Shown here piece by piece: positions 8,097-55,734 of a stretch of 64,000 nucleotides of DNA. The first letter of the stretch is position 1, and each line of letters opens with the position of its first letter. The stretch spans positions 1 to 64,000 of IMG/VR virus record IMGVR_UViG_3300011113_000805. The stretch is one strand, 5' to 3'. The position numbers were made by a program, and so were the translations under genes. Below the pieces are notes generated by a model. It did no database searches, had not been told where the DNA came from, and saw only the letters and a program-made list of their open reading frames with translations.

Positions 8097-8395
8097 CGCC
8101 TTGCCTTCTTGGAACGCAATTCTTCAGAGATCATCTCAACCATCGCCTCCTGAAAGCGAGGATCGGTGGCGACACGATAAGCCTCACGATCCAACTCATC
8201 ACCGGTTTTACCATGAAGAGCAACGAGAGGACGAGAAACCTTCAGTAGGCCACGAAGAAGGACATTTCGCGCAGTCGCATGATTCATCTCATCACCATCG
8301 GCGGTCATTTGCTCGGCAATCTCACGAAAGCCTAGACCAACACCGGTGACAGTGGAGTAGCCATGATTAAACTTCTGACCCTTAGGCATAGACAT
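8093..8395 (-). CDS. HTH protein resembling sigma region 4.2
   Basis: GFREIAEQM...NHATARNVLLRGLLKV; TGATG overlap with the sigma stop codon. Confidence 0.6.
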   Translation of the reverse strand: MSMPKGQKFNHGYSTVTGVGLGFREIAEQMTADGDEMNHATARNVLLRGLLKVSRPLVALHGKTGDELDREAYRVATDPRFQEAMVEMISEELRSKKARR

Positions 8396-9165
8396 CAAAC
8401 ACCTCCACAGCGAGAATCAAGTACGTCAACTTCGGCCTGACTGATAGGAAAATCCCCATCATTGTCAGGATCTTCAGAGATTCCGAACCTAAGTCGAATG
8501 ATTTTCTCCTCACGAGGACTCAGCGCCTGGAGTGCATCACGAACAATTGCAATCATGCGCTCTCGATCAATAATGTCCGTTGCGTCCTGCTGATTCTCAT
8601 CGGTCAGGGTCTCATGAAGTCGAGGACCCTCACCATCACCGCCAGGAACCTGACTGTCAAGGGAAAGAGTGCCTCGATACGTATTCATCAGAACCTGGTA
8701 CCGATCGATTGAGACACCCATAAACTCGGCAACCTCCTCATCGGAAGGCGGAGATCCAAGCTCACGGGTGTAATCTTGAATCATCATCTTTGCGCGATAG
8801 TAGAAGGCATTGGCCGACGCAGGCATCCGAATATTGCAACTTTGATCTACCAGGTGACGACGGACAGACTGCTTAATCCACCACGTGGCATAGGTGCTGA
8901 ATTTGAAGCCACGACGCCAGTCGAAACGATCCACAGCCTTCATCAGGCCAATGTTGCCCTCCTGAATAAGATCTTCGAATGAAGACCCCTTATTCATGTA
9001 TCGCTTAGCGATGGAGATTGCCAGGCGCAGGTTGGATTGAATGAAAATCTCACGAGCCTGTCGATCACCAGCCTCAATTCGCTGAGCTAGCACTGCTTCT
9101 TGTTCACGAGTAAGCAGCGGGTGATTACCAACATTTTTGAAGAAGCCTGTCAAGGTGTCGGACAT
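8395..9165 (-). CDS. RpoD/RpoS-family sigma factor, lacking region 4.2
   Basis: NLRLAISIAKRY, DLIQEGNIGLMKAVDRFD..RGFKFSTYATWWI, LSLD, LSPREEKIIRLRFG, then ends without the HTH. Confidence 0.92.
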   Translation of the reverse strand: MSDTLTGFFKNVGNHPLLTREQEAVLAQRIEAGDRQAREIFIQSNLRLAISIAKRYMNKGSSFEDLIQEGNIGLMKAVDRFDWRRGFKFSTYATWWIKQSVRRHLVDQSCNIRMPASANAFYYRAKMMIQDYTRELGSPPSDEEVAEFMGVSIDRYQVLMNTYRGTLSLDSQVPGGDGEGPRLHETLTDENQQDATDIIDRERMIAIVRDALQALSPREEKIIRLRFGISEDPDNDGDFPISQAEVDVLDSRCGGV

Positions 9166-9247: not shown

Positions 9248-11291
<2,044 letters not shown>

Positions 11292-22784: not shown

Positions 22785-23357
22785 TCACTGTGTAACAAGA
22801 GGGTGACAGTTCCAACACAGCGGTTCATAAGTATCTGCTCCGCCAACTTCGATCTCATCTTCAGATGGGACTCGCCTATGTGTCAATGCAGCATCAGCAC
22901 CACAGGCGACACAGACAGCAGCACACTTCTCCACACGTGTAGCGAATGACAGGATCTTCTCCATCTCTGGAAAAGGTTTCAGGTTAGCTGAGAGCTCGAT
23001 GGAGGAGACATAGACCGAGATACCACGCATGAAAGCTGTCAGTAGAGCACTTGCACAACCGTCAATCATAAAGGCCTCATCGACGGCAATAACATCAGTA
23101 GGATTTTTCTCGATGTAGCGAACGATATCCTCACCAGAGGAAACCGGGATTGCAGAGATGGAACTGCCTGAATGGGTCACAATAGCTGTCTCTGCATAGC
23201 GTCCATCAATAGTGGGCTTAAAGCAGGCGACACGAGTTTTTCGAAGACGATGACGCTCCACGGCGGCAGTGAGTCGAGTCGATTTTCCCGACCACATGGG
23301 ACCACAATAAACAACAAACTCTTTGTTTATCACCGATCGATGTGAACAACTAACCAT
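22785..23357 (-). CDS. tdk: Thymidine kinase
   Basis: GPMWSGKST, FKPTID.RY, VDEA.M, CVAC...YEPLCWNC. Confidence 0.92.
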   Translation of the reverse strand: MVSCSHRSVINKEFVVYCGPMWSGKSTRLTAAVERHRLRKTRVACFKPTIDGRYAETAIVTHSGSSISAIPVSSGEDIVRYIEKNPTDVIAVDEAFMIDGCASALLTAFMRGISVYVSSIELSANLKPFPEMEKILSFATRVEKCAAVCVACGADAALTHRRVPSEDEIEVGGADTYEPLCWNCHPLVTQ

Positions 23358-23405
23358 TTATTTTCCTCTCCACATAGTATACTATATGTATGAATGGAGG
23401 CTGAA

Positions 23406-24275
23406 ATGTTTATTGAGAGAATTTCGACACCGAGAATCAATAAGAAAGGAGAACCATCGAAACAGAACAGGGTTATCTTTAAGTATGAGTGTGATACCTG
23501 CGGTGTGATTTACGAAAAGAGGCCCTGTAGCGCTAGCCGATCTACAAGCGGTCTTACTTTCTGTAGCAGAAAGTGCAGAGGTATGTCTGTTAGAGTCGGA
23601 AACGAAGCTTATCTTCTCACTAAAAAGAAGATGCTCGAGATTCACGGAGTTGAAAACTTGATGCAGCGCAAAGAAACAAGAGAGAAAATCAAGAAAACGC
23701 TCCTCGAGAGATACGGTGTTGAGAACCCTTCCCATTCTAAAGAATTCAAGGAAAAACGAAAAAGAACACATCTTGAGAGGTACGGTCACGAAGAAACTTT
23801 TCAGTCTCCGGAAATTCTCGCAAAGCGTGAGGTCACATGGATGAAGAAGTACGGGCAGAAAGATCCAAGAAATCAACCTCATCTGCAACAGATTGCAAAA
23901 GAAAAATCTCAAGAAACGATGATGCAGTATCCACAAAAGTGGTCATCAAAAATTGAGAATTCTTTTGCGGAGACCCTCTCATCTGTATTCGGTGAGGTGA
24001 TTAGACAAAAGCGGGTCAATCGATGGCCCATCGACTACTACATCCCTTCCATCGATACTTACATCCAGCTTGATGGGGTCTATTGGCACGGTCTTGACAA
24101 ACCAATTGATGAGATTAGAGAGTCAAGACGACCAAGAGACATCGGGAGAGTTCAAAAGTGGGAACAGGACAGAAAACAGGAAGAGTGGTTTGCCTCTCAT
24201 TCACTTCGTCTTGTTAGAGTGACCGACATCGAGGTGAAAGAGGGGAAAGCTCTTTCAAAAATTCAAAATCACTAA
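23406..24275 (+). mobile_element. Free-standing Vsr-like (DUF559/EDxHD-type) homing endonuclease
   Basis: CxxC...FCSRKC zinc motif, ERYGVENP repeats, IDYYIP...IQLDGVYWH...D; opposite strand to both neighbours; SD GGAGG. Confidence 0.8.
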
Positions 24276-27974: not shown

Positions 27975-28929
27975 AATCTTCACCTATAAGAATAAGCCCT
28001 GTTGATTTTTCAGTAAGGGCACTTAGAATTTGTGTAATACAGGATTCTTTGAATTTGCCCTTTTGAAATTCTGAGTGAGAAACCCTAATTACGGTATACC
28101 CTTTCTTTGTCAAGGCTTCATTTAATATTAAATCAGACCGCCTTATGTTTTCAAGTTTCTCAGCTCCGAATATTGGCAAAAAGTGAACAGGACCATCAAA
28201 TTCTACCACCACCTTCAACAGCGGATCCATGATATCGATTTGTCGTCTCTTCGAAATCGTGTTAAACGATACATCAAATATTCTTTGATTTTTACGAAAC
28301 CCAACATGATGTTTGCTAAGCATGTCAAATAAGGCTTTTTCAGGATAGCTTTGCTTAACAGCATGCATTCTCATAGTGCATTTCGAATAAAATTCTTCAG
28401 GATTGGAAGATCTCCACTTTGCAAGTGCAATTGTTCTTGCATGAAGAATTTCAGGTTTGTTTGAAGTAACTCTTGCTACACGTGATGATCTTTCACGACT
28501 TTTTTCACTCCTATTAAGATTGGACAAATTTTCACTTCTTGCCTTAATGGCACTAGGTGACCTTCGAATGCCTGATGATTTTGCTTCACCATGGCCGGCC
28601 CCATTTATTTTCCCAGCACTACTGTACTTTTTAACACATTCGTCTGCTGCAATTTGACCAGTATAGTCTTTCTTGGTAATGCCATGAGATTTTCTTAGGT
28701 GACGAGTTAAGATTCGAAACTTTTCTCCGCATATAAGGCAGACAACAAAATCCTTTCCTTCAGTTAGAGAAATACATTTCTCGCATGAAAGAACATGTGA
28801 CCAGAATATTGAGTTTTCCCTTAGGAAAGATCTTCCGCAGTCACAACAATTTCCAAGTCTTCCTGAATGATTTTCCAGATTGGAAGCATCTGACCGCAAG
28901 TTGTCCTGAATTTGTGATCCATCGTGCAT
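27961..28929 (-). mobile_element. Vsr-like/DUF559 homing endonuclease between the dnaE split-intein halves
   Basis: Zinc finger CLICG...HLRKSH; IDIMD...VVEFDGPVH...D...GYTVIRV; overlaps both dnaE parts out of frame. Confidence 0.8.
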
Positions 28930-31742
28930 CGAACTTTTTCTCCTGTATCAAGCTCAAACTCGTGCAGCTCTAAGACACCATGGTCATGCTTTGCACGAAC
29001 CTGAACAAACAAGTCTTTTCCTGTTGATTCTTCACGAGACTTAACAAAGCAACCTGGGGTGATGTCCTTGAGCATCAAAGTTTCAATAAACTCACCATTA
29101 TGTGAATACGTATGTACCTCTTCCTCAAAGTGACAAGTTTTATTGAAGCCATAAAGTGAGAAGTACGCGATGGTATCAAAGAGGTCCTGGGCTTGCTTTG
29201 GTGTCAATCCGGATTTCTCAATACAGCCGGAGACAAACTTCTTCTCCAGTGCCTCCTTCTCCTCAGACTTCTTACCAAGTGAGGTAAGATCTTTCTTCAC
29301 CAGAGTCTTTCGCATCTTGTCAGAGTCACCAGGTGAGAAACCTGCGAGTTTCTGAGCAAGTACCATGAATTGTTCCTGGAACACAATAAAGCCGCATGTG
29401 GGGCCCAGGACTTCTTCGATAACAGGATGATCGTACTTGATGGCATCTCGATTCTGCTTTGCCTCCACATATTTTTTGTGCACATTGGCTTTCAAAGGAC
29501 CGGGGCGATAGATCGCCGTAATGGTGGAGAGGTCGATAATATTCTCAGGCTTTGCTGCCACACAGAACTTTCGAGCTCCATCTGATGTGAACTGGAAGAT
29601 GCCTGACCAACGACCCTCCTGATAGACATGCCTGAAGACTTTTGAATCATTAGGCTCCACATAGCGACAATTGAGCTTCTGATCATAGAAGTCTTTTACT
29701 TCGACAAAGGTGGGATCTCGACCAAGCTCTCGGAGGAGGATTCGACGAATGCAGTCCTCCACCATTTGCATTTGCTTCAGGCCCAAGAAATCAAACTTCA
29801 GAAAGCCGTTCTCTTCCAAGTTTCGAATATTGACACCTTCGGTCCACGGTGTCTGGAGTTCTCCCTTTACCGTGATGAGAGGCATGTGCTTCTCAAGTTC
29901 TGGGCAGATGAGGACGCCGCCAGCATGTCGACCAACAGATCGATTCATCATGAAGAGTGATCGCACCTTGTCTTGTACCTGAGGATACTTCTCCATAAAC
30001 TCACGGTATCGAGGTGAGTGCTCCATACAGTCCTCGTGCTTCAGAACAAACATGGACTTCTCCATGTTAGGATCACGGGATTTCTCGGCAACCTCACGTT
30101 CAAGGGGTCCGGTGACGGCATTGACTTCATCGAAGGGAACACCGTAGAACTTGGAGACATCTTTTACCAGTGACTTCAGCTTCAGGGTATTGAAGTTGGA
30201 GACCGGCACCACTGATTCCTCACCGAAGATCTCACGTGCCGCCTCAATGAGCTTATCACGATCACCGACATCAGTGTCAATATCTGGCCAAGATGCCTTC
30301 TGCCGAGAGAGAAACCGCTCCCAGAGGAGATCATACTTAATAGGATCCACGTGTGTGATACCAAGGAGATAGTTCACAAGGGAGCCTGCGCCACTTCCGC
30401 GGCCGGCGCCTGGAAGGGTCCTGTTCTCGGCGACCTTAAAGACTTTCTCCAAGGTAAGAAAGTAGTCCTCAAACTTGAGGAACTTGATATCACCAAGCTC
30501 CATTTTTGCACGTTCGATATAGACAGGATCCTTGTGGAGTCCTTCCTCAATGAGTCGCTCCTTCACGATCTGTGTCAATTGACTCATCCCGGTCTGCTCA
30601 GGTGTGTTGAACTTTGGAAGCTTTGCGCTACCATCAAACCATACCTGCTGACATTGCTCCCAAACAATATCGTGTGACCGCTCGATGGCATCTCGGACTC
30701 TCTCCTCGTTGCCACGGTAGAAGCTATTGTCCGGGATAAGGCTCACGAACTCGTCCCAGATCTCATTCGCATTCTTCGGATAAAGCTCAGCCTTCAGATC
30801 TGTCCTCAGTGGGAGGACAGGTGCTGTGCCATCATTCTTGATGCGACCGGGCTGAAGCTGACGATAGATCTCACGAGACTCCCAGAAGTCCGGACCTGGG
30901 TAGTGCGAGTCTGAAGTAACGATGAGTGGGACGCCAGTCTTCTGTGAAGCATCTAGAAGAAACCGATTCGTAAGATTCTGGGCAGGAAGCTTGTTGAACT
31001 GTAGCTCTAGGAAGAAATTATCGCGACCAACAGCATCAGTAAAGCGATCCACCATATTTCCAAGACGTCCCAGGATACGATTACGACCAGCTACTCCTGC
31101 GACATCATAGAGATCAGGTGTCAGCTCGGAGAACTTCTTGTCAGGAAACTCTCGAAAGATATTTCCAGAGGCGAAACCGCCTACACAGGCCGTGCTGACA
31201 ATAAGGCCGCGACCATGTTCCCGAAGCATCTGAAAGTCGATTCGAGGAAACTTATAGAAACCCTCACGGAAAGATCGCTTCACCAGTGTAAAGAGATTTG
31301 CCAGGCCCTCATTGTCACGTGCCACCACCACTATGTGGTAGCGTCGATTAATGTTATCAACAACATCGGAGGATCGAGTCTCATCGGCATCCTCCACCAC
31401 AAGGCGACCATTGCCGTCCTCGTCAACAAGGGACTCCTCCTCCTGGCTCATTCCTGACTTGGAGAGGGCATATGCCTTTCGCCACTCATTGAGATCCGGA
31501 ACAAAGTAGAACTCAACACCAAAGAGCTGTCGAAAGTGCTTTCCTTTGGTGATGAGCTTTTTTGCGTGAGCATGAGCATGAGCAAGACCATTGCCATTGC
31601 CATGATCTGTCAGGGTCCAAGAGTCAAGTCCATTGGAGATACTGAAGTCGATGTGATCGGAGGGCTGCCCAAATCCATCGTAAGGTGAAAAATGGCTATG
31701 ACCATGAATGGAGGCATATCGACGAGGAGGTTGGATGATCAT
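28821..31742 (-). CDS. dnaE: DNA polymerase III alpha N-terminal part fused to a split N-intein (about 28821-29138)
   Basis: PHP HGHSHFS..DG/TDHG, GRGSGAGSL, PDIDTD, KFDFLGL, YGFNK, then a Hint N-half with CTMDHKF. Confidence 0.93.
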   Translation of the reverse strand: MIIQPPRRYASIHGHSHFSPYDGFGQPSDHIDFSISNGLDSWTLTDHGNGNGLAHAHAHAKKLITKGKHFRQLFGVEFYFVPDLNEWRKAYALSKSGMSQEEESLVDEDGNGRLVVEDADETRSSDVVDNINRRYHIVVVARDNEGLANLFTLVKRSFREGFYKFPRIDFQMLREHGRGLIVSTACVGGFASGNIFREFPDKKFSELTPDLYDVAGVAGRNRILGRLGNMVDRFTDAVGRDNFFLELQFNKLPAQNLTNRFLLDASQKTGVPLIVTSDSHYPGPDFWESREIYRQLQPGRIKNDGTAPVLPLRTDLKAELYPKNANEIWDEFVSLIPDNSFYRGNEERVRDAIERSHDIVWEQCQQVWFDGSAKLPKFNTPEQTGMSQLTQIVKERLIEEGLHKDPVYIERAKMELGDIKFLKFEDYFLTLEKVFKVAENRTLPGAGRGSGAGSLVNYLLGITHVDPIKYDLLWERFLSRQKASWPDIDTDVGDRDKLIEAAREIFGEESVVPVSNFNTLKLKSLVKDVSKFYGVPFDEVNAVTGPLEREVAEKSRDPNMEKSMFVLKHEDCMEHSPRYREFMEKYPQVQDKVRSLFMMNRSVGRHAGGVLICPELEKHMPLITVKGELQTPWTEGVNIRNLEENGFLKFDFLGLKQMQMVEDCIRRILLRELGRDPTFVEVKDFYDQKLNCRYVEPNDSKVFRHVYQEGRWSGIFQFTSDGARKFCVAAKPENIIDLSTITAIYRPGPLKANVHKKYVEAKQNRDAIKYDHPVIEEVLGPTCGFIVFQEQFMVLAQKLAGFSPGDSDKMRKTLVKKDLTSLGKKSEEKEALEKKFVSGCIEKSGLTPKQAQDLFDTIAYFSLYGFNKTCHFEEEVHTYSHNGEFIETLMLKDITPGCFVKSREESTGKDLFVQVRAKHDHGVLELHEFELDTGEKVRCTMDHKFRTTCGQMLPIWKIIQEDLEIVVTAEDLS

Positions 31743-45868: not shown

Positions 45869-46471
45869 TTAGTCCAGTGTGTACTTGAGATCAATCTTGC
45901 ATGTGAGTGTTGGAAGACGAAGCTCATTAGCCAGCCCATGAGACTTTGCTTCGATCGCATCTAGATACCAGTCAGCATGCCCACGCTCATGAACAAGCTT
46001 CAGAAAGTAATCAGATGGCTTGCCGCAGTTTCGTGCCATCATCTCATAGACCTTCTTGTTGAGTCGATCGGCCTCACGTGAGTCAGCCTTAAGCTCCTCA
46101 ACCTTTCCAATAGCACCAGAGGAAACATCATGAATCATAAGGGTTGCATCCGGATCCATGAATCGCATGCCTTCGGCACCAAAGGAGAAAAGGATGGCAC
46201 CACAGGACATTGCTTTGCCTTCTACAATGGTAGCAACAGGTACCCGTGAAGATCGAATAGAGGCAATCATGGACATTAGGGAATAAACCTGGCCACCATA
46301 AGAATCGATAACAACTGGAATAACTGACTGACCAGTGTTCTGGGCCATGCTCATTTGCGAAGTGAACTCCTTTGCTGACTCTTCATCAAACTTGTTAACA
46401 CGAATGATGATTGGATCGACCTTGAGTTCAACTGCCTTGATCTGTGGTGCAATGTCTGCAATAAAGTTCAT
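45869..46471 (-). CDS. clpP: ClpP-family protease
   Basis: IDSYGG, GKAMSCG, LMIHD, D.YLDA.EA...GL; start at ATG 46471. Confidence 0.85.
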   Translation of the reverse strand: MNFIADIAPQIKAVELKVDPIIIRVNKFDEESAKEFTSQMSMAQNTGQSVIPVVIDSYGGQVYSLMSMIASIRSSRVPVATIVEGKAMSCGAILFSFGAEGMRFMDPDATLMIHDVSSGAIGKVEELKADSREADRLNKKVYEMMARNCGKPSDYFLKLVHERGHADWYLDAIEAKSHGLANELRLPTLTCKIDLKYTLD

Positions 46472-46529
46472 GTTATATCCTGCTTGTGTTAGGTTGTTGA
46501 TTACCTGCTCTTGCACATCTTCTTCGTAG

Positions 46530-47531
46530 CTACTTGCAACGACTCCACCCGCAAGAGGAACACGATAGGCATCCCTCTTGGTAGATGAGATCTCCGTTGC
46601 CACACTCCGGACATCCCTTTTCACTTGACTTAGTGCCATCCTTAATATACCCCTTGAGAACCCTAGCAATTACCTTTGCAAATGAGAACATATCACTGTT
46701 TTTATCCTTTTGCAGCTGCTCAACGACGTAATGAATTGGAACATTGTGACGTAAAGCAAGTGAGATTGTTCGCGTGAATGCACCCTGTGTTGAATTGTCG
46801 AAAAGTGTGACAATATCCTTGAAGACTAGATTGTCATCATCACCGACTGGAACGAGGAGATTGTATGTAGTAACTCCTTCACGCTTACCATTTTTAACCA
46901 ATGTGCCTGACTTGTATCGCTTTGGAATCTCAATATTTTCAGGAATGCCACAAAATACCTCGTAGGGCTTCCCCTCATTGAGTCCCACCAGAATGAGCCA
47001 AGATGTTCCTCCAATATTTGCTCTATGAATATCGCACTCTAGGGTCTTTGGCCTCTTTGGTGTGAGACGACCGTCAGCAAGGGGTTTTGGCTGGACTGTC
47101 TTGGGCTCTTCAGACTGCACTAAGACACCGGTTCTGCAACCGTCACGATAGACCGTAAATCCCTTGCACCCAGACTTCCATGCCTGAAGATAGACGTCAT
47201 TAACGGTCTCACGAGTCGCTGAGTTGGGGAGGTTGCAATTATGAACCGTAAAACCATTTGCTGAAAATGAATTCCCATCAGGAACTGTTAAATCATAAGT
47301 TCTTTCATTTCCTAGCATTTCAATTGAAAGAATCTCATCGAAATCATCGGCTGTTTTGGATTCATCAAGCCATCGCTTAAGCGTCCAATATCCGGGATTT
47401 TTAATATCTGATTCATTCAGATGCGCGGTAAGTAATAAAAATTTTGCCGCTTCCTGTTTGTTTACTCGAAATTCACGAGGAATTCGAACTTCTGCATTCT
47501 TACAGATAACTTCTACAGCCAAGTCTTGCAT
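46530..47531 (-). CDS. nrdJ: Class II RNR C-terminal part fused to a split C-intein (47238-47531)
   Basis: TYDLTV...SANGFTVHN|CNLP...GCKGFTVYRDG; PYEVF domain; terminal CPECG...EGC..C..CGWSRC. Confidence 0.9.
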   Translation of the reverse strand: MQDLAVEVICKNAEVRIPREFRVNKQEAAKFLLLTAHLNESDIKNPGYWTLKRWLDESKTADDFDEILSIEMLGNERTYDLTVPDGNSFSANGFTVHNCNLPNSATRETVNDVYLQAWKSGCKGFTVYRDGCRTGVLVQSEEPKTVQPKPLADGRLTPKRPKTLECDIHRANIGGTSWLILVGLNEGKPYEVFCGIPENIEIPKRYKSGTLVKNGKREGVTTYNLLVPVGDDDNLVFKDIVTLFDNSTQGAFTRTISLALRHNVPIHYVVEQLQKDKNSDMFSFAKVIARVLKGYIKDGTKSSEKGCPECGNGDLIYQEGCLSCSSCGWSRCK

Positions 47532-48574
47532 TATAACCTTCCCAGTATTTTAAGCAGATCTTCATTAAAGATCTCGGTTTCAGTAAGAACATGAAAGTTT
47601 TGGCCAAGAACATCTCTTGCTGCCGAAATTTTCAAGGCATTAACATGCTCACACACTTTTTTAAGTGGCTTTATTTCTAGAACAATTGTACTACCTATAG
47701 CATTGACAAATGCTATATCAGGATAGTAGTGCCTTCTTGAATTGCTTATCATATACTGAATTCTTTCAGGTGTTATTACTCTTTGAATTCTACATTGTCC
47801 AAGAAGATTGTCTAAAGCTTCAAAAACTTTTTTCTCCCATGATGATCTATAAAAAAACTTATCGTTTTCCTGATTGTTCATTCTATACCACCCCTTCTCA
47901 GAGTTCTTATATCCATTCTTATCAGATTCTAAAGAAGATCTAGAGAACCTATTTGATAGATACTCACTATAAAGTGAGTCTATTGCGTCAGGAGTAAGTT
48001 CATCAATATTTTTAATGTGCATATGCAATAGAATGTGCTTCATTTTCCAAGCATGAGTATTCTTCACTCTAAAGTTTTTGTAAGCTTCTTTAGTAATCTG
48101 CTTTCTCTTGTTGTCAGAGAAATTTTTGCTATATGCAATTCCAAGCATTGAACATGCTGATTTAAGAACCCTTTCCTTGTCAGCCAACTTTATTGCATCA
48201 TGATTGCCATATTTTTTAAGCCTTCCTATTGCTATCTTTTCTGAGTGGTTTGATAGATTTTTGAATTCGCGTGCCCATAATTCTAACACATCACTATCAC
48301 ATAATCCATCGAAAGGAATGTCATGTGATATCAAAAAGTTTTTTGCACGTGTTATTTTGCTTGATTTACCATTCCTAGAAAAATCACCTGTTTCTCTTAT
48401 CTTTCTGATTCTTAATGTGTCACCATGCATTCTTCTGTTATGATAATCAGGTGTTGCCTTAAAACATTTTAATGAACAGCAGCCATGCTTCATACTAACA
48501 GATTTCGAAATTATACTGTCCATTTGATCGACAATTTTATTGCAAACTTTGCATTCGAATGTTGTTCTAGGCAC
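47531..48574 (-). mobile_element. TnsA-like PD-(D/E)xK endonuclease between the nrdJ split-intein halves
   Basis: CxxC..CSLKC; YRSSWE...I.Y....RHYYPD......LEIKP; AT-rich. Confidence 0.75.
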
Positions 48575-48615
48575 TTTCTACTCCACAGGATCTACATATG
48601 CCATGGAGTAGAAAG
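48574..48615 (-). promoter_or_regulatory. RBS-sequestering hairpin with an ATAnnTA motif in the loop
   Basis: 12-bp stem 48574-48585/48604-48615 covers the SD GGAG and the first base of GTG; CATATGTA in the loop. Confidence 0.75.
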
Positions 48616-48618
48616 AAA

Positions 48619-51120
48619 TTATGATAACTTAACTCTGTCACCGATATTAATGTCCTTTAATTCTGCCCATGCCTCAAGACCATCATCATCGTTAAGCAAA
48701 ATAAACTTATGATCTAGTGTTGTTTTGATGCTTAATCCGGATTTTGTGGTCACACGATAAACCGGCTTAACACCTTGATCTGAGACAAATCCAATCATTG
48801 CTAAACGGCCATGATGATTAACCGTCATGAGGTCACTAACAGTTGCCGAACTTTCAGATTGACAGTTAGAAAGCTCGGCAATTTCATCGGCATAAAGCAA
48901 CCCACTATCTGTTTCAACAAGAGAATCACCTGATACACAAGTTTTAGAAATTGAGTGATCAACCCATCGCTGGGCAGCCGCTTGAATCTTTACCGAATTT
49001 ACCCAGTCAATGTCATTTGCAGTTGCACCCCAATATGGACTTTCCTGAGGATCTGACTTACCCGTGATATCCATCCACTTTTTGAACCAATGATGATAGA
49101 CAGTATATTCCTGCCACTTATCACCCATTGGATCCACAAAATCAACTCGGGATGTGATATCACCCTGCGTGATCTTTCGACGACGTTTATAGGAGAGCAG
49201 GAATGCTGGTTCAATTCCGGATGTTGTCTGGGTTAGGATGGAAACAGATCCTACAGGTGCTGTGGTTGTGAGGGCAATATTACGACGACCCGATGTGCGC
49301 CACATCTCGAGGGCACCTGGTGACTCAGTCTCGACTACCTGCATAATCTTGCCAAGGTAGCTATGTCCTTTCTCTTTCTCCCAGTCCCAGACAGGGAAAG
49401 CACCACGCTCGTGTGCCATCACTAGTGAGGAGTAGTGAGACCAGGTGGCCAGTGATTTGTAGATCTTCTCAGTAACCGCAATAGACTCCTCTGAGCCATA
49501 CCGAAGTCCTAGTGCTGCCAGGGCATCACCAAGGCCCGTGATCCCAAGTCCTGTCCTGCGACCATTGCTACCGGCAGCACGAATCTTCTCCCAGAGATCC
49601 TGTTCAATCTGCTTCACATGCTTGGGCTGTGGATCGTTCTTGATTTTCTCCAGAATGCGATCGACACACTCGACCTCAAGATCAACAAGGTCATCCATTA
49701 GGCGCTGTGCATCCTGAGTGACAGTTGCAAACTCATCAAAATTGAAACTTGCATTTGGCGTAAATGGGTTTCGAATGAATGAGGTGAGATTGATCACCAT
49801 CAGGCGGCAAGAGTCATATGGGCTGAGCGGGATTTCTCCACAATTGTGAACCAGAATATCATTTGCAAAGAAATTATGTACATCATCAACGGTTAGATCA
49901 TAAACATCTTCATTTTTTACCGCTGAGATGTCTTGAATTTCATCCCATTCTGTATTAATTTTGAGAATTTTATCACTAGTTTGAAGCTCGCCCGCCTCAA
50001 TCCAGCCTCTCTGTGTAAAAACTCTGTGATCAGGAGTTAGCTTAATTGATTTACCACTCTTTGTGGTAAGTTGCAGAATTTTTGCATCTTCCTTTGTTTT
50101 GAAAGCAGTCGCTGTTTTCTGTACAACCTTATTTTCCTTAATGTCATATGCACAAACCATAAACTGTGCATTATTATCTGCAAGTTCTTTAACAGTCTTT
50201 GGTCCTGCATTTGTTTTTACAACTGTGTCACCGGTGACACACGGATTCGTTGAGATTGTCTTGTATCCGACATCCCTATAGCAATCGACAATGCCTTCAT
50301 TGACCACCGTATCCCAGAAAAGAGCTCCAGGTTCAGCAGATGCCCAGGCAGCATCAATAAACTTCTCCCAAACTTGCCTTGCATTGACCACGCGTGTAAT
50401 CTCAGCATCTTCAGGAGCTGCCTCTACGGGCCATCGAAGAGTAAAGTCCTCGCCCTTCTCAACCGCCCGCATAAACTCATCAGTAAATCTGATTGAGATA
50501 TTTGCACCGGTAACTTTCTTAAGGTCACGCTTGATGTCAATAAATGTTTCAAGCTCAGGATGATTACAATGAACGGTTAGCATCAGGGCCCCACGCCGGC
50601 CGCCTTGAGCAACTTCCCGTGTAGAGTTGGAGAAGCGCTCCATAAAGACACCGATACCATCAGTCGTCCGGGCCGCATTGGTTGTTGGTTGTCCCTTTGG
50701 ACGAATGGTGGAGATGTCAAAGCCAACGCCTCCGCGGCGCTTCATAATCTGCACCTGTTCCTGATCGCTGAAGAGGATGCCGCCGTAGGAGTCGTGAGGC
50801 TGATCAATAACAAAACAGTTGGAAAGTGACTGAAGCTGATGAGGATTGCCAATTCCTGACATTGGCGATCCCTGAGGGACTACTTGGGCAAATCCCGTGA
50901 GGAGACTCAGGATTCTTTCCTCACTGAGTGGGTTTGGATACTTTGCCTCGATCCTCGCAAACTCCTTTGCAAGCCGTGTATGTAGCTGCCCAGGATCGGT
51001 CTCTAGCAAGTCACCCTGATGATTCCTGAGAGCGTACTTCAGAAAGACATCCGGTGCAAGCTCATCACCGCCAAAGGCCTCACGAAGGTGTTCAAGAACG
51101 CTTTGATTTTTGTTACTCAT
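48619..51120 (-). CDS. nrdJ: Class II RNR N-terminal part with a cis mini-intein and a split N-intein (48619-48939)
   Basis: SLSNCFV, GGVG, RRGALM, EPGA, TNP|C..HN|CGE, RRTGLG, APVGS, SISKT|CVSGD...TTLDHKF. Confidence 0.93.
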   Translation of the reverse strand: MSNKNQSVLEHLREAFGGDELAPDVFLKYALRNHQGDLLETDPGQLHTRLAKEFARIEAKYPNPLSEERILSLLTGFAQVVPQGSPMSGIGNPHQLQSLSNCFVIDQPHDSYGGILFSDQEQVQIMKRRGGVGFDISTIRPKGQPTTNAARTTDGIGVFMERFSNSTREVAQGGRRGALMLTVHCNHPELETFIDIKRDLKKVTGANISIRFTDEFMRAVEKGEDFTLRWPVEAAPEDAEITRVVNARQVWEKFIDAAWASAEPGALFWDTVVNEGIVDCYRDVGYKTISTNPCVTGDTVVKTNAGPKTVKELADNNAQFMVCAYDIKENKVVQKTATAFKTKEDAKILQLTTKSGKSIKLTPDHRVFTQRGWIEAGELQTSDKILKINTEWDEIQDISAVKNEDVYDLTVDDVHNFFANDILVHNCGEIPLSPYDSCRLMVINLTSFIRNPFTPNASFNFDEFATVTQDAQRLMDDLVDLEVECVDRILEKIKNDPQPKHVKQIEQDLWEKIRAAGSNGRRTGLGITGLGDALAALGLRYGSEESIAVTEKIYKSLATWSHYSSLVMAHERGAFPVWDWEKEKGHSYLGKIMQVVETESPGALEMWRTSGRRNIALTTTAPVGSVSILTQTTSGIEPAFLLSYKRRRKITQGDITSRVDFVDPMGDKWQEYTVYHHWFKKWMDITGKSDPQESPYWGATANDIDWVNSVKIQAAAQRWVDHSISKTCVSGDSLVETDSGLLYADEIAELSNCQSESSATVSDLMTVNHHGRLAMIGFVSDQGVKPVYRVTTKSGLSIKTTLDHKFILLNDDDGLEAWAELKDINIGDRVKLS
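49843..50241 (-). mobile_element. Cis mini-intein (133 aa, no endonuclease) at the RNR active-site NPCGE
   Basis: CVTGDT...TPDH...VYDLTV..HNFFAN..VHN|C. Confidence 0.92.
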
Positions 51121-51121
51121 G

Positions 51122-52507
51122 TCACTTTGCTCCCATAACTTGTTTCCACTTCTCTCGCAGGACATTCTTCCTGCTATTGTCATCCTGGGTTATTGCTTCC
51201 TGTAAGGTGAGCTCACCCTCATCTAGAACTTTAATGGTAGAACGAGCCGTGTCAATGTGAATAGGAAAAAGAATGCCATCACGTCCTGCTCGATTCTTTG
51301 CTACAAAAAGCCTTCCCATTCCTGTGGCCTTTTCGGCAGGCTTTCGGGAGAGAGAGAGGACCACGTCAGCCACCATTGCCTTGCCATAGGACTCTGACAT
51401 ATTCTCAAGGCCAACAATGTCAGAATTTGAGGAGTCACGATTTGCCTGGGATGCCGTCCAGATGGGAATGTTTTTCTCCATTGCCAGGTTTCGAAGCTCC
51501 TCATAAATAAGCTTAAGCTCAAGTCTTAGGGCATCATACTCTCGCGATGATCGCATAATATCAGCATAGTCGATGAGAATCAGATTAGGAACAAATCCTC
51601 TCAACGAGAGCTTCTCGAGGTGATTTCGAAGGGTATTGACAGTTGCCGTGCCTGTAGGATACTCCTTGATGATGAGCTTGCCTAGCTCCATATCCTTGTA
51701 CTTGTCCATTACCTCCTGCTTTGAGTCCTGGATCTCGTTGGACGGGATCTCAGTCAGGTGAGAGTCATAGCGAATGCCAACCGCTGTCTCAGTGAGCTCA
51801 AACGTATAATGAACAACATTCTTTCCTCGTTTCAGGGCGTTTGCTCCCAAGGAGACAAGCATATGGCTCTTGCCGACACCGGTATTTGCAGCAATAACCC
51901 CTAGCTCACCGCGACCAAGGCCTCCATTAAGGACTGTCTTCTCGTCAAGCTGATCAATACCGGTAGGACATGCAGCGCGATTGATCTTAACAAAACGAGC
52001 TTCAGCATCCTCAAAGAAGTCATGACCAACAGATGTGGGCAGGCCTACGGAGACTGCCTTGCGCATAAGATCAACGACGGCATCATACTTGTCACCTGAA
52101 ATAAGTTCGACAGATTTCTCAAGTGCCTCACGAAGGGCTTGCTTCCTGCAAAAATCAAGCGCCTTATCCTTCACATATGCAATGTCACCCATGTCAGGTG
52201 AGTGACGCATACGACCCAGGTACTCTACAATTTGCTCCTTAAGGACAGCATTGCTTGGCTCACGCAGCTCATCCTTGATGATGGAGATGAGCAAGGAGAG
52301 AGTCGGAAACGAGCGATACTTGCCATTGTACTTGAAGTACTTGTCACTGAGGTAAGCAAGGTATTTCAAGTCAAAGTAGTTTGGTTGCATCACCTCTGAC
52401 ATTTGTGCGGCCCAGGTATGATCGGTCAGGAGGCCCTGGAAGATCTTTTCCTGAAAGGGTTTGCCATACTGCTTGAATAACGCTTCACCGGGACTATTGT
52501 CAGACAT
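51122..52507 (-). CDS. DnaB/gp41-like replicative helicase
   Basis: ANTGVGKS, IIKEYP, IDYAD, WTASQANR, KNRAG. Confidence 0.92.
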   Translation of the reverse strand: MSDNSPGEALFKQYGKPFQEKIFQGLLTDHTWAAQMSEVMQPNYFDLKYLAYLSDKYFKYNGKYRSFPTLSLLISIIKDELREPSNAVLKEQIVEYLGRMRHSPDMGDIAYVKDKALDFCRKQALREALEKSVELISGDKYDAVVDLMRKAVSVGLPTSVGHDFFEDAEARFVKINRAACPTGIDQLDEKTVLNGGLGRGELGVIAANTGVGKSHMLVSLGANALKRGKNVVHYTFELTETAVGIRYDSHLTEIPSNEIQDSKQEVMDKYKDMELGKLIIKEYPTGTATVNTLRNHLEKLSLRGFVPNLILIDYADIMRSSREYDALRLELKLIYEELRNLAMEKNIPIWTASQANRDSSNSDIVGLENMSESYGKAMVADVVLSLSRKPAEKATGMGRLFVAKNRAGRDGILFPIHIDTARSTIKVLDEGELTLQEAITQDDNSRKNVLREKWKQVMGAK

Positions 52508-55705: not shown

Positions 55706-55734
55706 ATTATAGTAATTGTCTCTTAGGTTTTCAA
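55706..55734 (-). promoter_or_regulatory. Sigma70-like promoter of the SSB gene
   Basis: TTGAAA-N17-TATAAT. Confidence 0.65.

What the first reader, a model, noticed from the sequence alone, without database searches (positions are those of the whole stretch)
48574..48615. Timing switch for the nrdJ-embedded nuclease: anti-SD hairpin with a late-promoter motif in the loop
Seen: a perfect 12-bp stem pairs the SD (GGAG) and the first base of the GTG start, and the loop holds CATATGTA, matching the ATAnnTA motif. Known: T4 I-TevI and related endonucleases use this design. Inference: read-through nrdJ mRNA keeps the nuclease off and a late transcript lacks the 5' arm. Since NrdJ-C is coupled to the nuclease stop codon, the hairpin could also affect RNR assembly. 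A weaker ctcca/tggag pairing with ATATGTA precedes the endonuclease at 23406.
Basis: partly seen in the sequence, partly recalled or inferred. Interest (0 to 1): 0.6.

Follow-up and report, generated by a model that had tools for sequence, protein, structure and literature searches.

The report
Hairpin switch on nrdJ-splitting nuclease
A freshwater giant phage has its ribonucleotide reductase gene cut in two by a selfish nuclease gene whose ribosome-binding site is locked in a conserved RNA hairpin with a promoter-like motif in the loop; this on/off design is already known from phage T4 and from "fractured genes", so it is a well-supported new example, not a new principle.

Summary
On the minus strand, a perfect 12-bp stem (48615-48604 with 48585-48574) pairs the GGAG Shine-Dalgarno and the G of the GTG start of a 347-aa ORF. 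The 18-nt loop holds ATATGTA. The fold is -21.2 kcal/mol, z -3.9.

nrdJ is a "fractured gene" of the kind described by Dassa et al. 2009. It consists of an N-extein with a 106-aa N-intein half, a free-standing PD-(D/E)XK nuclease, and a C-intein half with the C-extein.

In seven related loci from metagenomes, five of them with nuclease proteins only 48-57% identical, the hairpin persists with different stem letters: 8 of 15 pairs change on both sides, and 87% of cells are paired against 42-54% in slid controls. The loop core CATAYKTA stays fixed.

ATAnnTA is enriched 5-fold between genes in this genome. It sits 15-25 nt before the starts of tail tube, sheath, adaptor and portal genes, with the same spacing as at the nuclease.

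The I-TevI/mobE-type switch is therefore the best explanation, but no transcription start was mapped. The claimed effect on RNR assembly and the second hairpin at 23406 are not supported. It is a new member of a known kind.

The parts
48604..48615 (-). 5' arm of the hairpin (CTTTCTACTCCA), the anti-SD strand; it begins 3 nt after the nrdJ-N stop codon
   Evidence: compensatory changes
48586..48603 (-). 18-nt loop TGGCATATGTAGATCCTG; its outer 3 nt on each side can pair in the window but not in L002
48593..48599 (-). ATATGTA, the promoter-like ATAnnTA motif; the core CATAYKTA is invariant or near-invariant in 8 loci; the predicted start of a short transcript is about 48586-48588
48574..48585 (-). 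3' arm TGGAGTAGAAAG holding the SD GGAG (48581-48584) and the first base of the start codon
48572..48574 (-). GTG start codon of the nuclease (ATG in the more distant relatives)
47531..48574 (-). Free-standing nuclease gene, 347 aa: N-terminal Cys4 motif, helical middle, C-terminal PD-(D/E)XK domain (E247, D286, E300, K302 invariant)
48619..48621 (-). TAA stop of the nrdJ-N piece
48622..48939 (-). N-terminal half of the split intein (106 aa, CVSGDSL...TLDH...KLS)
48940..51183 (-). nrdJ N-extein (class II RNR barrel). The ORF is given as listed; the true start is probably the ATG at 51120. It contains a contiguous 133-aa mini-intein at 49843-50241.
47238..47531 (-). C-terminal half of the split intein (98 aa, ends ...FTVHN), including a conserved extension of about 55 aa; its ATG overlaps the nuclease stop (TAATG)
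47537..47542 (-). GGAAGG, an SD-like sequence for nrdJ-C inside the 3' end of the nuclease gene
46530..47237 (-). nrdJ C-extein (starts with the +1 Cys, CNLPNSAT...; TSCPD domain)
55706..55734 (-). Sigma-70-like promoter candidate (TTGAAA-17-TATAAT, 11/12) at the head of the tightly packed run of genes that ends in nrdJ; a likely source of read-through transcripts

Best explanation
The hairpin is the translational lock of a homing-endonuclease cassette that has fractured nrdJ inside an intein. On long transcripts that enter from the upstream replication genes (UvsX-like, 5'-3' exonuclease, DnaB-like helicase, nrdJ-N), the 5' arm pairs with the GGAG and the start codon of the nuclease. Ribosomes therefore rarely initiate there. 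The loop DNA carries a -10-type promoter element of this phage's ATAnnTA class. RNA polymerase starting 5-7 nt downstream of it would make a transcript that begins just before UGGAG, lacks the 5' arm, and is translated. Nuclease synthesis would thus be confined to the time when that promoter class is active, probably late, together with virion genes. Shown here: the hairpin, its selection as a structure, the conservation of the loop motif, the motif's enrichment and placement before structural genes, the open structure of the shortened RNA, the nuclease fold, and the fractured-gene layout. Inferred: that the motif is a promoter, the start position, the timing, and the repression itself.
For: There is a perfect 12-bp stem plus 3 inner pairs over the SD and start, -21.2 kcal/mol, z -3.87. 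Loci L002 and L003 (97% and 88% protein identity) keep it, with one A-U to C-G double change. The loop core GCATATGTAGAT is invariant there, while 3 of the other 6 loop positions vary. Loci L010-L014 (48-57% protein identity, same nrdJ-N / nuclease / nrdJ-C layout) keep a hairpin at the same place with different letters. On alignment A3, 87.3% of cells are paired against 42-54% when the partner is slid, 8 of 15 pairs change on both sides, and 0 of 500 shuffles reach the covariation score. ATAnnTA: 42 of 149 minus-strand copies are intergenic, 5.1x against 1.4-2.6x for composition-matched patterns. ATATGTA itself is intergenic in 5 of 9 copies. The motif lies before the tail tube gene, both sheath genes, the adaptor and the portal. 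The distance from motif to start peaks at 15-24 nt (nuclease 18). The distance from motif to SD is mostly 5-9 nt (nuclease 8). The motif is in 8 of 17 gaps in the structural block against 3 of 17 in the replication block. RNAs starting at 48592, 48589 or 48587 have no significant structure, z +1.1. There is no gap of more than 6 nt between UvsX and nrdJ-N, and a sigma-70-like promoter lies upstream. The phage encodes a sigma-70-family protein and a second weak sigma/gp55-like ORF, and no RNAP beta subunit or T7-type RNAP was found. The same design occurs at this phage's own genes: the Dam methylase hairpin has ATATATA in its loop, and the fibre-like gene has ATAATTA at its 5' arm. Precedents are I-TevI, I-TevII, I-TevIII, segB and Aeh1 mobE (PMC2988022), and 15 of 16 fractured-gene endonuclease leaders, 10 of them with TATAAATA (PMC2677866).
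Against: No transcription start, no expression timing and no translation data exist. The phage is uncultured and the public runs are held only as contigs. The loop motif ATATGTA differs from the commonest form before virion genes (ATA[C/G/A]ATA) at its fifth base, and relatives have ATACTTA or ATATTTA. It matches T4's TATAAATA at only 5 of 8 positions. A thymidine kinase gene also has the motif, so the class is not strictly 'structural'. The 8/17 versus 3/17 contrast is not significant on its own. The gp55-like hit is weak (E 0.003, and 0.62 by BLASTP). The stop codon of nrdJ-N lies 0-3 nt before the stem in all loci, so terminating ribosomes must open the stem base, which could give coupling instead of pure repression. 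The loop block conserved in relatives (CCATAYTTACTNATAG) is longer than a minimal -10 element.
Confidence: 0.55

Rival explanations
1. Constitutive attenuator or translational coupler. The hairpin keeps nuclease translation permanently low. Alternatively, it lets translation happen only when a ribosome terminating at the nrdJ-N stop (3 nt upstream) melts the stem base. The loop then holds no promoter, and its conserved block is an operator or RNA-protein site (for example autorepression, as with I-TevI).
For: The stop codon is 0-3 nt from the stem in the window and in L010-L013. The conserved loop block in relatives is 12-16 nt, longer than a -10 element. The window clade also uses a weak GTG start. 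I-TevI binds an operator overlapping its promoter (PMC2988022).
Against: A ribosome at the stop would open only the lower few pairs. GGAG pairs with the distal part of the arm and would stay paired. The loop motif belongs to a family that is enriched before many unrelated genes, with matching spacing, which an element-specific operator does not explain.
Confidence: 0.25
2. RNA processing, stability or termination element. The hairpin marks the 3' end of the nrdJ-N message, or an RNase III-type cleavage site that separates the two halves of the operon.
For: It is a strong stem directly after a stop codon. The genome has many strong intergenic hairpins.
Against: No U-run follows the stem on either strand, and the terminator scan does not list it. 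nrdJ-C lies downstream and is needed together with nrdJ-N, so termination here would be harmful. The 3' arm always covers the SD and/or the start of the nuclease in relatives. There is no Rfam match.
Confidence: 0.1
3. DNA-level inverted repeat left by insertion of the cassette, or chance, with no function in RNA.
For: The element is mobile. An exact empty site exists in a relative.
Against: Covariation keeps pairing while the letters change. About 0.5 such stems are expected per genome by chance. The position relative to the SD and start is conserved.
Confidence: 0.05

Closest known systems
[quoted passage not shown] 2009, PMC2677866; includes NrdJ-1 and NrdJ-2)
   Same: The host gene is broken into two ORFs. 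N- and C-intein halves lie at the break, with a free-standing endonuclease ORF between them. There is a hairpin in the endonuclease leader, often with a late-promoter element. The endonuclease 3' end overlaps the start of the downstream piece. The context is phage.
   Different: The split site here is ...SISKT|CNLP..., not the thiyl-radical Cys site reported for NrdJ-1/2; that site here holds a contiguous mini-intein. The nuclease is neither GIY-YIG nor Vsr-like: it has a canonical E...PD...ExK motif and a TnsA-like fold. The loop motif is ATATGTA, not TATAAATA. The C-intein piece is 98 aa and has a conserved extension.
T4 I-TevI (also I-TevII, I-TevIII, segB): RBS-sequestering hairpin with a late promoter placed so that late transcripts lack the 5' arm (reviewed in PMC2988022)
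   Same: The logic is the same: the gene is embedded in an early/middle unit, the SD is about 6-8 nt from the start and is paired in a stable stem, and a promoter-like element lies between the 5' arm and the SD.
   Different: Those endonucleases are in group I introns or between genes, and belong to the GIY-YIG/HNH families. Their promoter is the gp55-dependent TATAAATA, with mapped starts. Here nothing is mapped and the phage is not T4-like (DnaE-type polymerase).
Aeh1 mobE inside nrdA (Gibb and Edgell 2007, 2009; Friedrich et al. 2007; cited in PMC2988022 and PMC2677866)
   Same: A homing endonuclease splits an RNR large-subunit gene. A hairpin sequesters its RBS and a late promoter is embedded. 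The two RNR pieces are expressed separately.
   Different: In Aeh1 there is no intein: the NrdA pieces assemble non-covalently. Here split-intein halves predict covalent trans-splicing. The enzyme is class II (NrdJ), not class I, and the nuclease family differs (PD-(D/E)XK against HNH).

Membership tests
I-TevI/mobE-type translational switch (RBS hairpin plus internal late promoter) | A stable RNA hairpin pairs the Shine-Dalgarno sequence and/or the start codon of the endonuclease | tested here: met
   12+3 bp, -21.2 kcal/mol, z -3.87; conserved with 8 of 15 covarying pairs
I-TevI/mobE-type translational switch (RBS hairpin plus internal late promoter) | A promoter lies within the hairpin, so that its transcript lacks the 5' arm | tested here: inconclusive
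   A conserved ATAnnTA motif is in the loop, with genome-wide enrichment and matching spacing. The shortened RNA is unstructured. No start has been mapped.
I-TevI/mobE-type translational switch (RBS hairpin plus internal late promoter) | That promoter is of the late class | tested here: inconclusive
   The motif lies before tail tube, sheath, adaptor and portal genes, but also before a thymidine kinase gene. The sigma/gp55-like ORF is only a weak hit.
I-TevI/mobE-type translational switch (RBS hairpin plus internal late promoter) | The gene is embedded in a longer transcription unit that is active earlier | tested here: inconclusive
   Gene packing leaves no gaps from UvsX to nrdJ-N. A sigma-70-like promoter is at 55734-55706, and no terminator-like site lies directly before the hairpin. 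This rests on layout only; there are no RNA data.
I-TevI/mobE-type translational switch (RBS hairpin plus internal late promoter) | Repression of translation on long transcripts and release on short ones | not testable with these tools
   This needs reporters or toeprinting.
Fractured gene (Dassa et al. 2009) | A conserved enzyme gene is broken into two adjacent ORFs on the same strand | tested here: met
   The RNR barrel profile covers positions 1-494 in the first ORF and 492-523 in the third
Fractured gene (Dassa et al. 2009) | Split-intein halves lie at the break (N half with blocks A/B; C half ending in HN, followed by Cys/Ser/Thr) | tested here: met
   The N half is C749...TLDH...; the C half ends in VHN, followed by C. 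Trans-splicing itself was not tested.
Fractured gene (Dassa et al. 2009) | A free-standing endonuclease gene lies between the halves | tested here: met
   Invariant E247, D286, E300 and K302. The AF2 model has pLDDT 88, and the best PDB matches are TnsA and other PD-(D/E)XK nucleases, with weak E-values from 6e-3. There are PHROG endonuclease and gp4-like hits. Cleavage was not tested.
Fractured gene (Dassa et al. 2009) | The endonuclease is of the GIY-YIG or Vsr-like (EDxHD) family | tested here: not met
   There is no Pfam hit and no PDB sequence hit. The motif is the canonical PD...ExK and the fold is TnsA-like. This is a feature of the described cases, not of the arrangement.
Homing endonuclease (mobile) | Presence/absence polymorphism, with an exact empty site in relatives | tested here: inconclusive
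   One contig in library X11 joins ...SKTC directly to NLPNSATK-E. It has only 25 nt on one side and depth 4.6. All 11 relatives examined sit at the same nrdJ site.
Rho-independent terminator | A GC-rich stem followed by a U-run | tested here: not met
   The stem is followed by GUGCCUAGAAC, and the terminator scan does not list it
T4-type late promoter | TATAAATA consensus and a gp55 homologue | tested here: not met
   CATATGTA matches at 5 of 8 positions. The gp55 protein finds nothing. The gp55 profile gives only E 0.003.

The most novel reading that the evidence does not exclude
The hairpin, the loop motif, the Zn-finger/PD-(D/E)XK nuclease and the conserved N-terminal extension of the C-intein piece form one portable, self-regulating cassette. 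On this reading it is a third, so far undescribed homing-endonuclease family of fractured genes. It is specific for a new nrdJ site (SKT|C) and spreads among uncultured freshwater giant phages with DnaE-type polymerases. Its loop motif would reveal the -10 element of a new phage-sigma-dependent late promoter class (ATAnnTA).
Probability: 0.4. Interest if true: 0.5.

Novelty: new member of a known kind. Interest (0 to 1): 0.4.

Why it matters
The finding adds an unusually well-supported case, with compensatory evolution across eight loci, to the idea that homing-endonuclease cassettes bring their own translational lock and promoter when they break an essential gene. It extends fractured genes to a new nrdJ site and to a canonical PD-(D/E)XK nuclease. 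It gives a candidate promoter motif for an uncharacterised lineage of freshwater giant phages. It also points to a naturally split NrdJ intein pair (106 + 98 aa) that could be tested as a trans-splicing tool. It does not change any principle.

Tried and rejected
- **Close relatives in curated phages.** Megablast of the locus against INPHARED phages found no match. tblastn of the nuclease gave only weak matches to T4 gp4-like 'head completion' nuclease domains.
- **IMG/VR scans.** Scans with the nuclease and with the hairpin pattern found nothing.
- **Pfam and PDB by sequence.** Neither gave a hit for the nuclease.
- **Rfam.** There was no match around the hairpin.
- **T4 gp55.** The T4 gp55 protein searched against the genome found nothing. 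The gp55 profile gave one weak hit, which BLASTP and hmmscan did not confirm.
- **TSS evidence from public reads.** It is not obtainable. All runs are held as contigs, and the RNA-library contigs stop on both sides of the hairpin (48521 and 48721), which shows nothing.
- **Terminator reading.** Rejected, because no U-run follows the stem.
- **Second hairpin at 23384-23410.** Rejected as structure, z -0.16.
- **Bias in the ATATGTA count.** Several ATATGTAT copies are the reverse complement of ATACATAT at divergent gene pairs. The heptamer count is therefore partly shared between strands.

Full report
**Observation.**
All genes around the finding are on the minus strand. The minus strand reads as follows:
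- TAA, the stop of an 854-aa ORF, at 48621-48619, followed by TTT.
- The 5' arm CTTTCTACTCCA at 48615-48604.
- An 18-nt loop TGGCATATGTAGATCCTG at 48603-48586.
- The 3' arm TGGAGTAGAAAG at 48585-48574.

The last G of the 3' arm opens the GTG start of a 347-aa ORF (47531..48574). The arms are exact complements, and GGAG (48584-48581) lies 6 nt before GTG. RNAfold gives -21.2 kcal/mol, with three further inner pairs. Shuffles average -10.8, z is -3.87, and 0 of 200 shuffles fold as well. The window is the first 64 kb of a 257-kb IMG/VR virus record. That record has 19 perfect stems of 12 bp or more, against about 0.5 in simulated genomes.

**What the locus is.**
- The 854-aa ORF is the class II ribonucleotide reductase barrel, Pfam profile positions 1-494 of 523. 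It carries a contiguous 133-aa mini-intein at the thiyl-radical Cys site (aa 315-447, window 49843-50241).
- Its last 106 aa (C749 VSGDSL ... TLDH ... KLS) are the N-terminal half of a second intein.
- The 333-aa ORF after the nuclease (46530..47531) starts with 98 aa ending in ...FTVHN, followed by Cys. It then continues with the end of the barrel and a TSCPD domain.

So nrdJ here is a 'fractured gene' in the sense of Dassa et al. [quoted passage not shown]

**The nuclease.**
- The 347-aa protein has no Pfam or PDB sequence match.
- Its C-terminal part matches PHROG endonuclease and gp4-like families.
- An alignment of 28 relatives has invariant E247, D286, E300 and K302, the canonical E...PD...ExK pattern, and a Cys4 motif at the N-terminus.
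- An AlphaFold model (mean pLDDT 88) is closest to TnsA and other restriction-endonuclease-fold nucleases, although the E-values are weak, 6e-3 at best.

The 'nuclease' label is therefore supported. The family is neither of the two (GIY-YIG, Vsr-like) described for fractured genes.

**Comparative evidence for the hairpin.**
The nuclease has 32 relatives in the metagenome protein collection, at 96-28% identity. I fetched 12 loci. One further look-up (P0010) returned the gene list but no DNA. Wherever the flanks are held, the layout is nrdJ-N / nuclease / nrdJ-C, with 41-46 nt between stop and start in the closer ones.

In L002 and L003 the hairpin is kept. L003 has an A-U to C-G double change in the stem. 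The loop core GCATATGTAGAT is invariant, while three of the six other loop positions vary. In L010-L013 (48-57% protein identity) a 12-15 bp hairpin sits at the same place with largely different letters. L014 has a weakened one, and L011 is shifted so that the ATG itself is paired.

On the eight-sequence alignment A3:
- 87.3% of cells form pairs, against 42-54% when the 3' partner is slid by 1-3 columns.
- 8 of 15 pairs change on both sides.
- No shuffle of 500 reaches the covariation score.

The more distant L015, L016 and L019 have other hairpins over the SD or ATG, and L017 and L018 show none that is clear. In L018 a second, unrelated free-standing ORF at the other nrdJ intein site is preceded by a 22-bp perfect hairpin, z -7.4. 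The hairpin is thus a selected structure and part of the cassette.

**The loop motif.**
Across A3 the loop keeps C-A-T-A-Y-K-T-A at a fixed position; the A, T, A, T, A of ATAnnTA are invariant.

In this genome ATAnnTA is intergenic in 42 of 149 minus-strand copies. That is 5.1 times expectation, against 1.4-2.6 times for eleven composition-matched patterns. The enriched members are ATACATA (10/21), ATAGATA (9/20), ATATGTA (5/9) and ATAATTA (4/8).

The copies lie before the tail tube gene, both sheath genes, the head-tail adaptor and the portal, among others. The distance from the motif's end to the start codon peaks at 15-24 nt (26 of 54 copies), and the nuclease's is 18. The distance to the first SD-like tetramer is mostly 5-9 nt, and the nuclease's is 8. 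The motif is in 8 of 17 gaps in the 64-125 kb structural block and in 3 of 17 in the 24-64 kb replication block, the nuclease's gap being one of the three. That contrast is not significant alone.

Some cautions apply:
- The virion-gene form is mostly ATA-N-ATA, close to the core of T4's TATAAATA, whereas the nuclease has G at the fifth position.
- Several ATATGTAT copies are the reverse complement of ATACATAT at divergent gene pairs.
- A thymidine kinase gene also carries the motif.

**Transcription apparatus.**
The phage encodes a clear sigma-70-family protein (window 8395..9165, 86 bits). It also has a second ORF (G000 126870..127604) with weak matches to both Sigma70_r2 and the gp55 profile, E about 0.003-0.007, which BLASTP and hmmscan did not confirm. 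No RNAP beta subunit was found; the search for a T7-type polymerase also found nothing, but that search rang in no control genome, so it shows nothing. The record is estimated 76% complete. The DNA polymerase is DnaE-like, and no close relative exists among deposited phages, so this is not a T4-like phage. 'Late' is an inference from the genes the motif precedes.

**Mechanism.**
From the UvsX-like gene through the 5'-3' exonuclease and the DnaB-like helicase to nrdJ-N, there is no gap longer than 6 nt. A sigma-70-like promoter (TTGAAA-17-TATAAT) lies at 55734-55706, and the only spacer in the run is the 44-nt one that holds the hairpin. Long transcripts therefore contain both arms.

If transcription starts 5-7 nt after ATATGTA, as at -10-only promoters, the RNA begins at about 48586-48588. 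That is one or two bases before UGGAG. Such RNAs have no significant structure: -6.6 to -7.7 kcal/mol, z +1.1. This is the design shown experimentally for I-TevI and Aeh1 mobE (review PMC2988022). Dassa et al. also noted it for 15 of 16 fractured-gene endonuclease leaders, ten of them with TATAAATA.

The same phage uses SD-sequestering perfect hairpins at its own genes: baseplate hub, glycosyltransferase, exonuclease, a fibre-like gene and Dam methylase. Two of these have an ATAnnTA element in the loop or at the 5' arm. This echoes T4 genes 25, 26, soc and e (PMC2988022).

**Rivals.**
- *Coupling or attenuation.* The stop codon lies 0-3 nt before the stem in all close loci. A terminating ribosome must therefore open the stem base, which could give coupling or constant attenuation without any promoter. 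This does not explain a loop motif shared with many unrelated genes.
- *Terminator or processing site.* This is unlikely, because no U-run follows the stem, nrdJ-C must be co-expressed, and there is no Rfam match.
- *Chance or an insertion scar.* Covariation excludes this.

The TAATG overlap of the nuclease stop and the nrdJ-C start is real. The reading frame after that ATG is conserved with synonymous changes in L003. However, nrdJ-C has its own GGAG/GGAAGG 5-8 nt upstream in 8 of the 11 loci compared, so dependence of RNR on nuclease translation is not indicated. The 'weaker hairpin' before the + strand HNH endonuclease at 23406 is not better than chance.

**Mobility evidence.**
Contigs from three independent DNA metagenomes (X2, X3, X5; about 97% identical) keep the nuclease and the split intein. 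They lack the mini-intein precisely, by a net 399 nt. One contig in an RNA-seq library (X11) joins ...SKT-C directly to NLPNSATK-E, the exact empty site. It is a single contig with only 25 nt on one side, so I treat it as suggestive.

**Verdict.**
The structure and its selection are shown. The promoter role and the timing are plausible but unmapped.
- It is a new member of a known kind.

Read laying was given 4,901 letters.

Noticed in passing
window 49843-50241 (-): A contiguous 133-aa mini-intein (no endonuclease domain) sits at the thiyl-radical Cys site of nrdJ-N. It is precisely absent (net 399 nt) in contigs from three independent DNA metagenomes that otherwise match at about 97% and keep the nuclease.
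   Followed up: partly
window 47210 joined to 48937 (run X11): One contig in a metatranscriptome library reads ...SKTC-NLPNSATK-E. This is an uninterrupted nrdJ without split intein or nuclease, the exact empty homing site. It has only 25 nt on one side and depth 4.6.
   Followed up: partly
window 47367-47531 (-), first ~55 aa of nrdJ-C: The C-intein piece is 98 aa instead of the usual 35-40. Its N-terminal extension carries a motif (RIPxE[FY]RxxKxxAxxFL) conserved in loci down to 28% nuclease identity. It may be a docking or DNA-binding module of the cassette.
   Followed up: partly
G000 71326-71364, 130271-130315, 131130-131164, 143137-143163, 169629-169671: Perfect 10-14 bp hairpins pair the SD and/or the start of the baseplate hub, a glycosyltransferase, a Cas4/RecB-like exonuclease, a fibre-like protein and a Dam methylase. 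The Dam loop holds ATATATA, and the fibre gene has ATAATTA at its 5' arm.
   Followed up: partly
L013:1-4044 and L018:1-4377: In two relatives nrdJ is fractured twice. A second free-standing ORF (281 and 255 aa) lies at the first intein site. L018:760-805 is a 22-bp perfect hairpin ending at that ORF's ATG (z -7.4).
   Followed up: partly
window 23384-24275 (+) and 22785-23357 (-): An HNH-type homing endonuclease gene lies antisense to its neighbours. A palindromic ATATGTAT/ATACATAT element between it and the divergent thymidine kinase gene could serve both directions. Similar divergent pairs occur at G000 166846 and 253012.
   Followed up: partly
window 8395-9165 (-); G000 126870-127604 (-): The phage encodes a sigma-70-family gene (Sigma70_r2, 86 bits) and a second ORF with weak sigma/gp55-like matches. 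No RNAP beta subunit was detected in the 257 kb held.
   Followed up: partly
window 28821-31742 (-), 9511-11118 (-), 45869-46669 (-): The record carries a DnaE-type DNA polymerase, a GroEL-like chaperonin and a ClpP-like protease. It comes from a freshwater giant phage with no megablast relative among 50,697 deposited phage records.
   Followed up: no
G000 216561-216605 / 216892-216936; 220575 / 220676; 221094 / 221211: These are pairs of near-identical intergenic repeats. Two contain TTGAC...ATAGATA or ATAGCTA blocks, possibly duplicated promoter regions.
   Followed up: no
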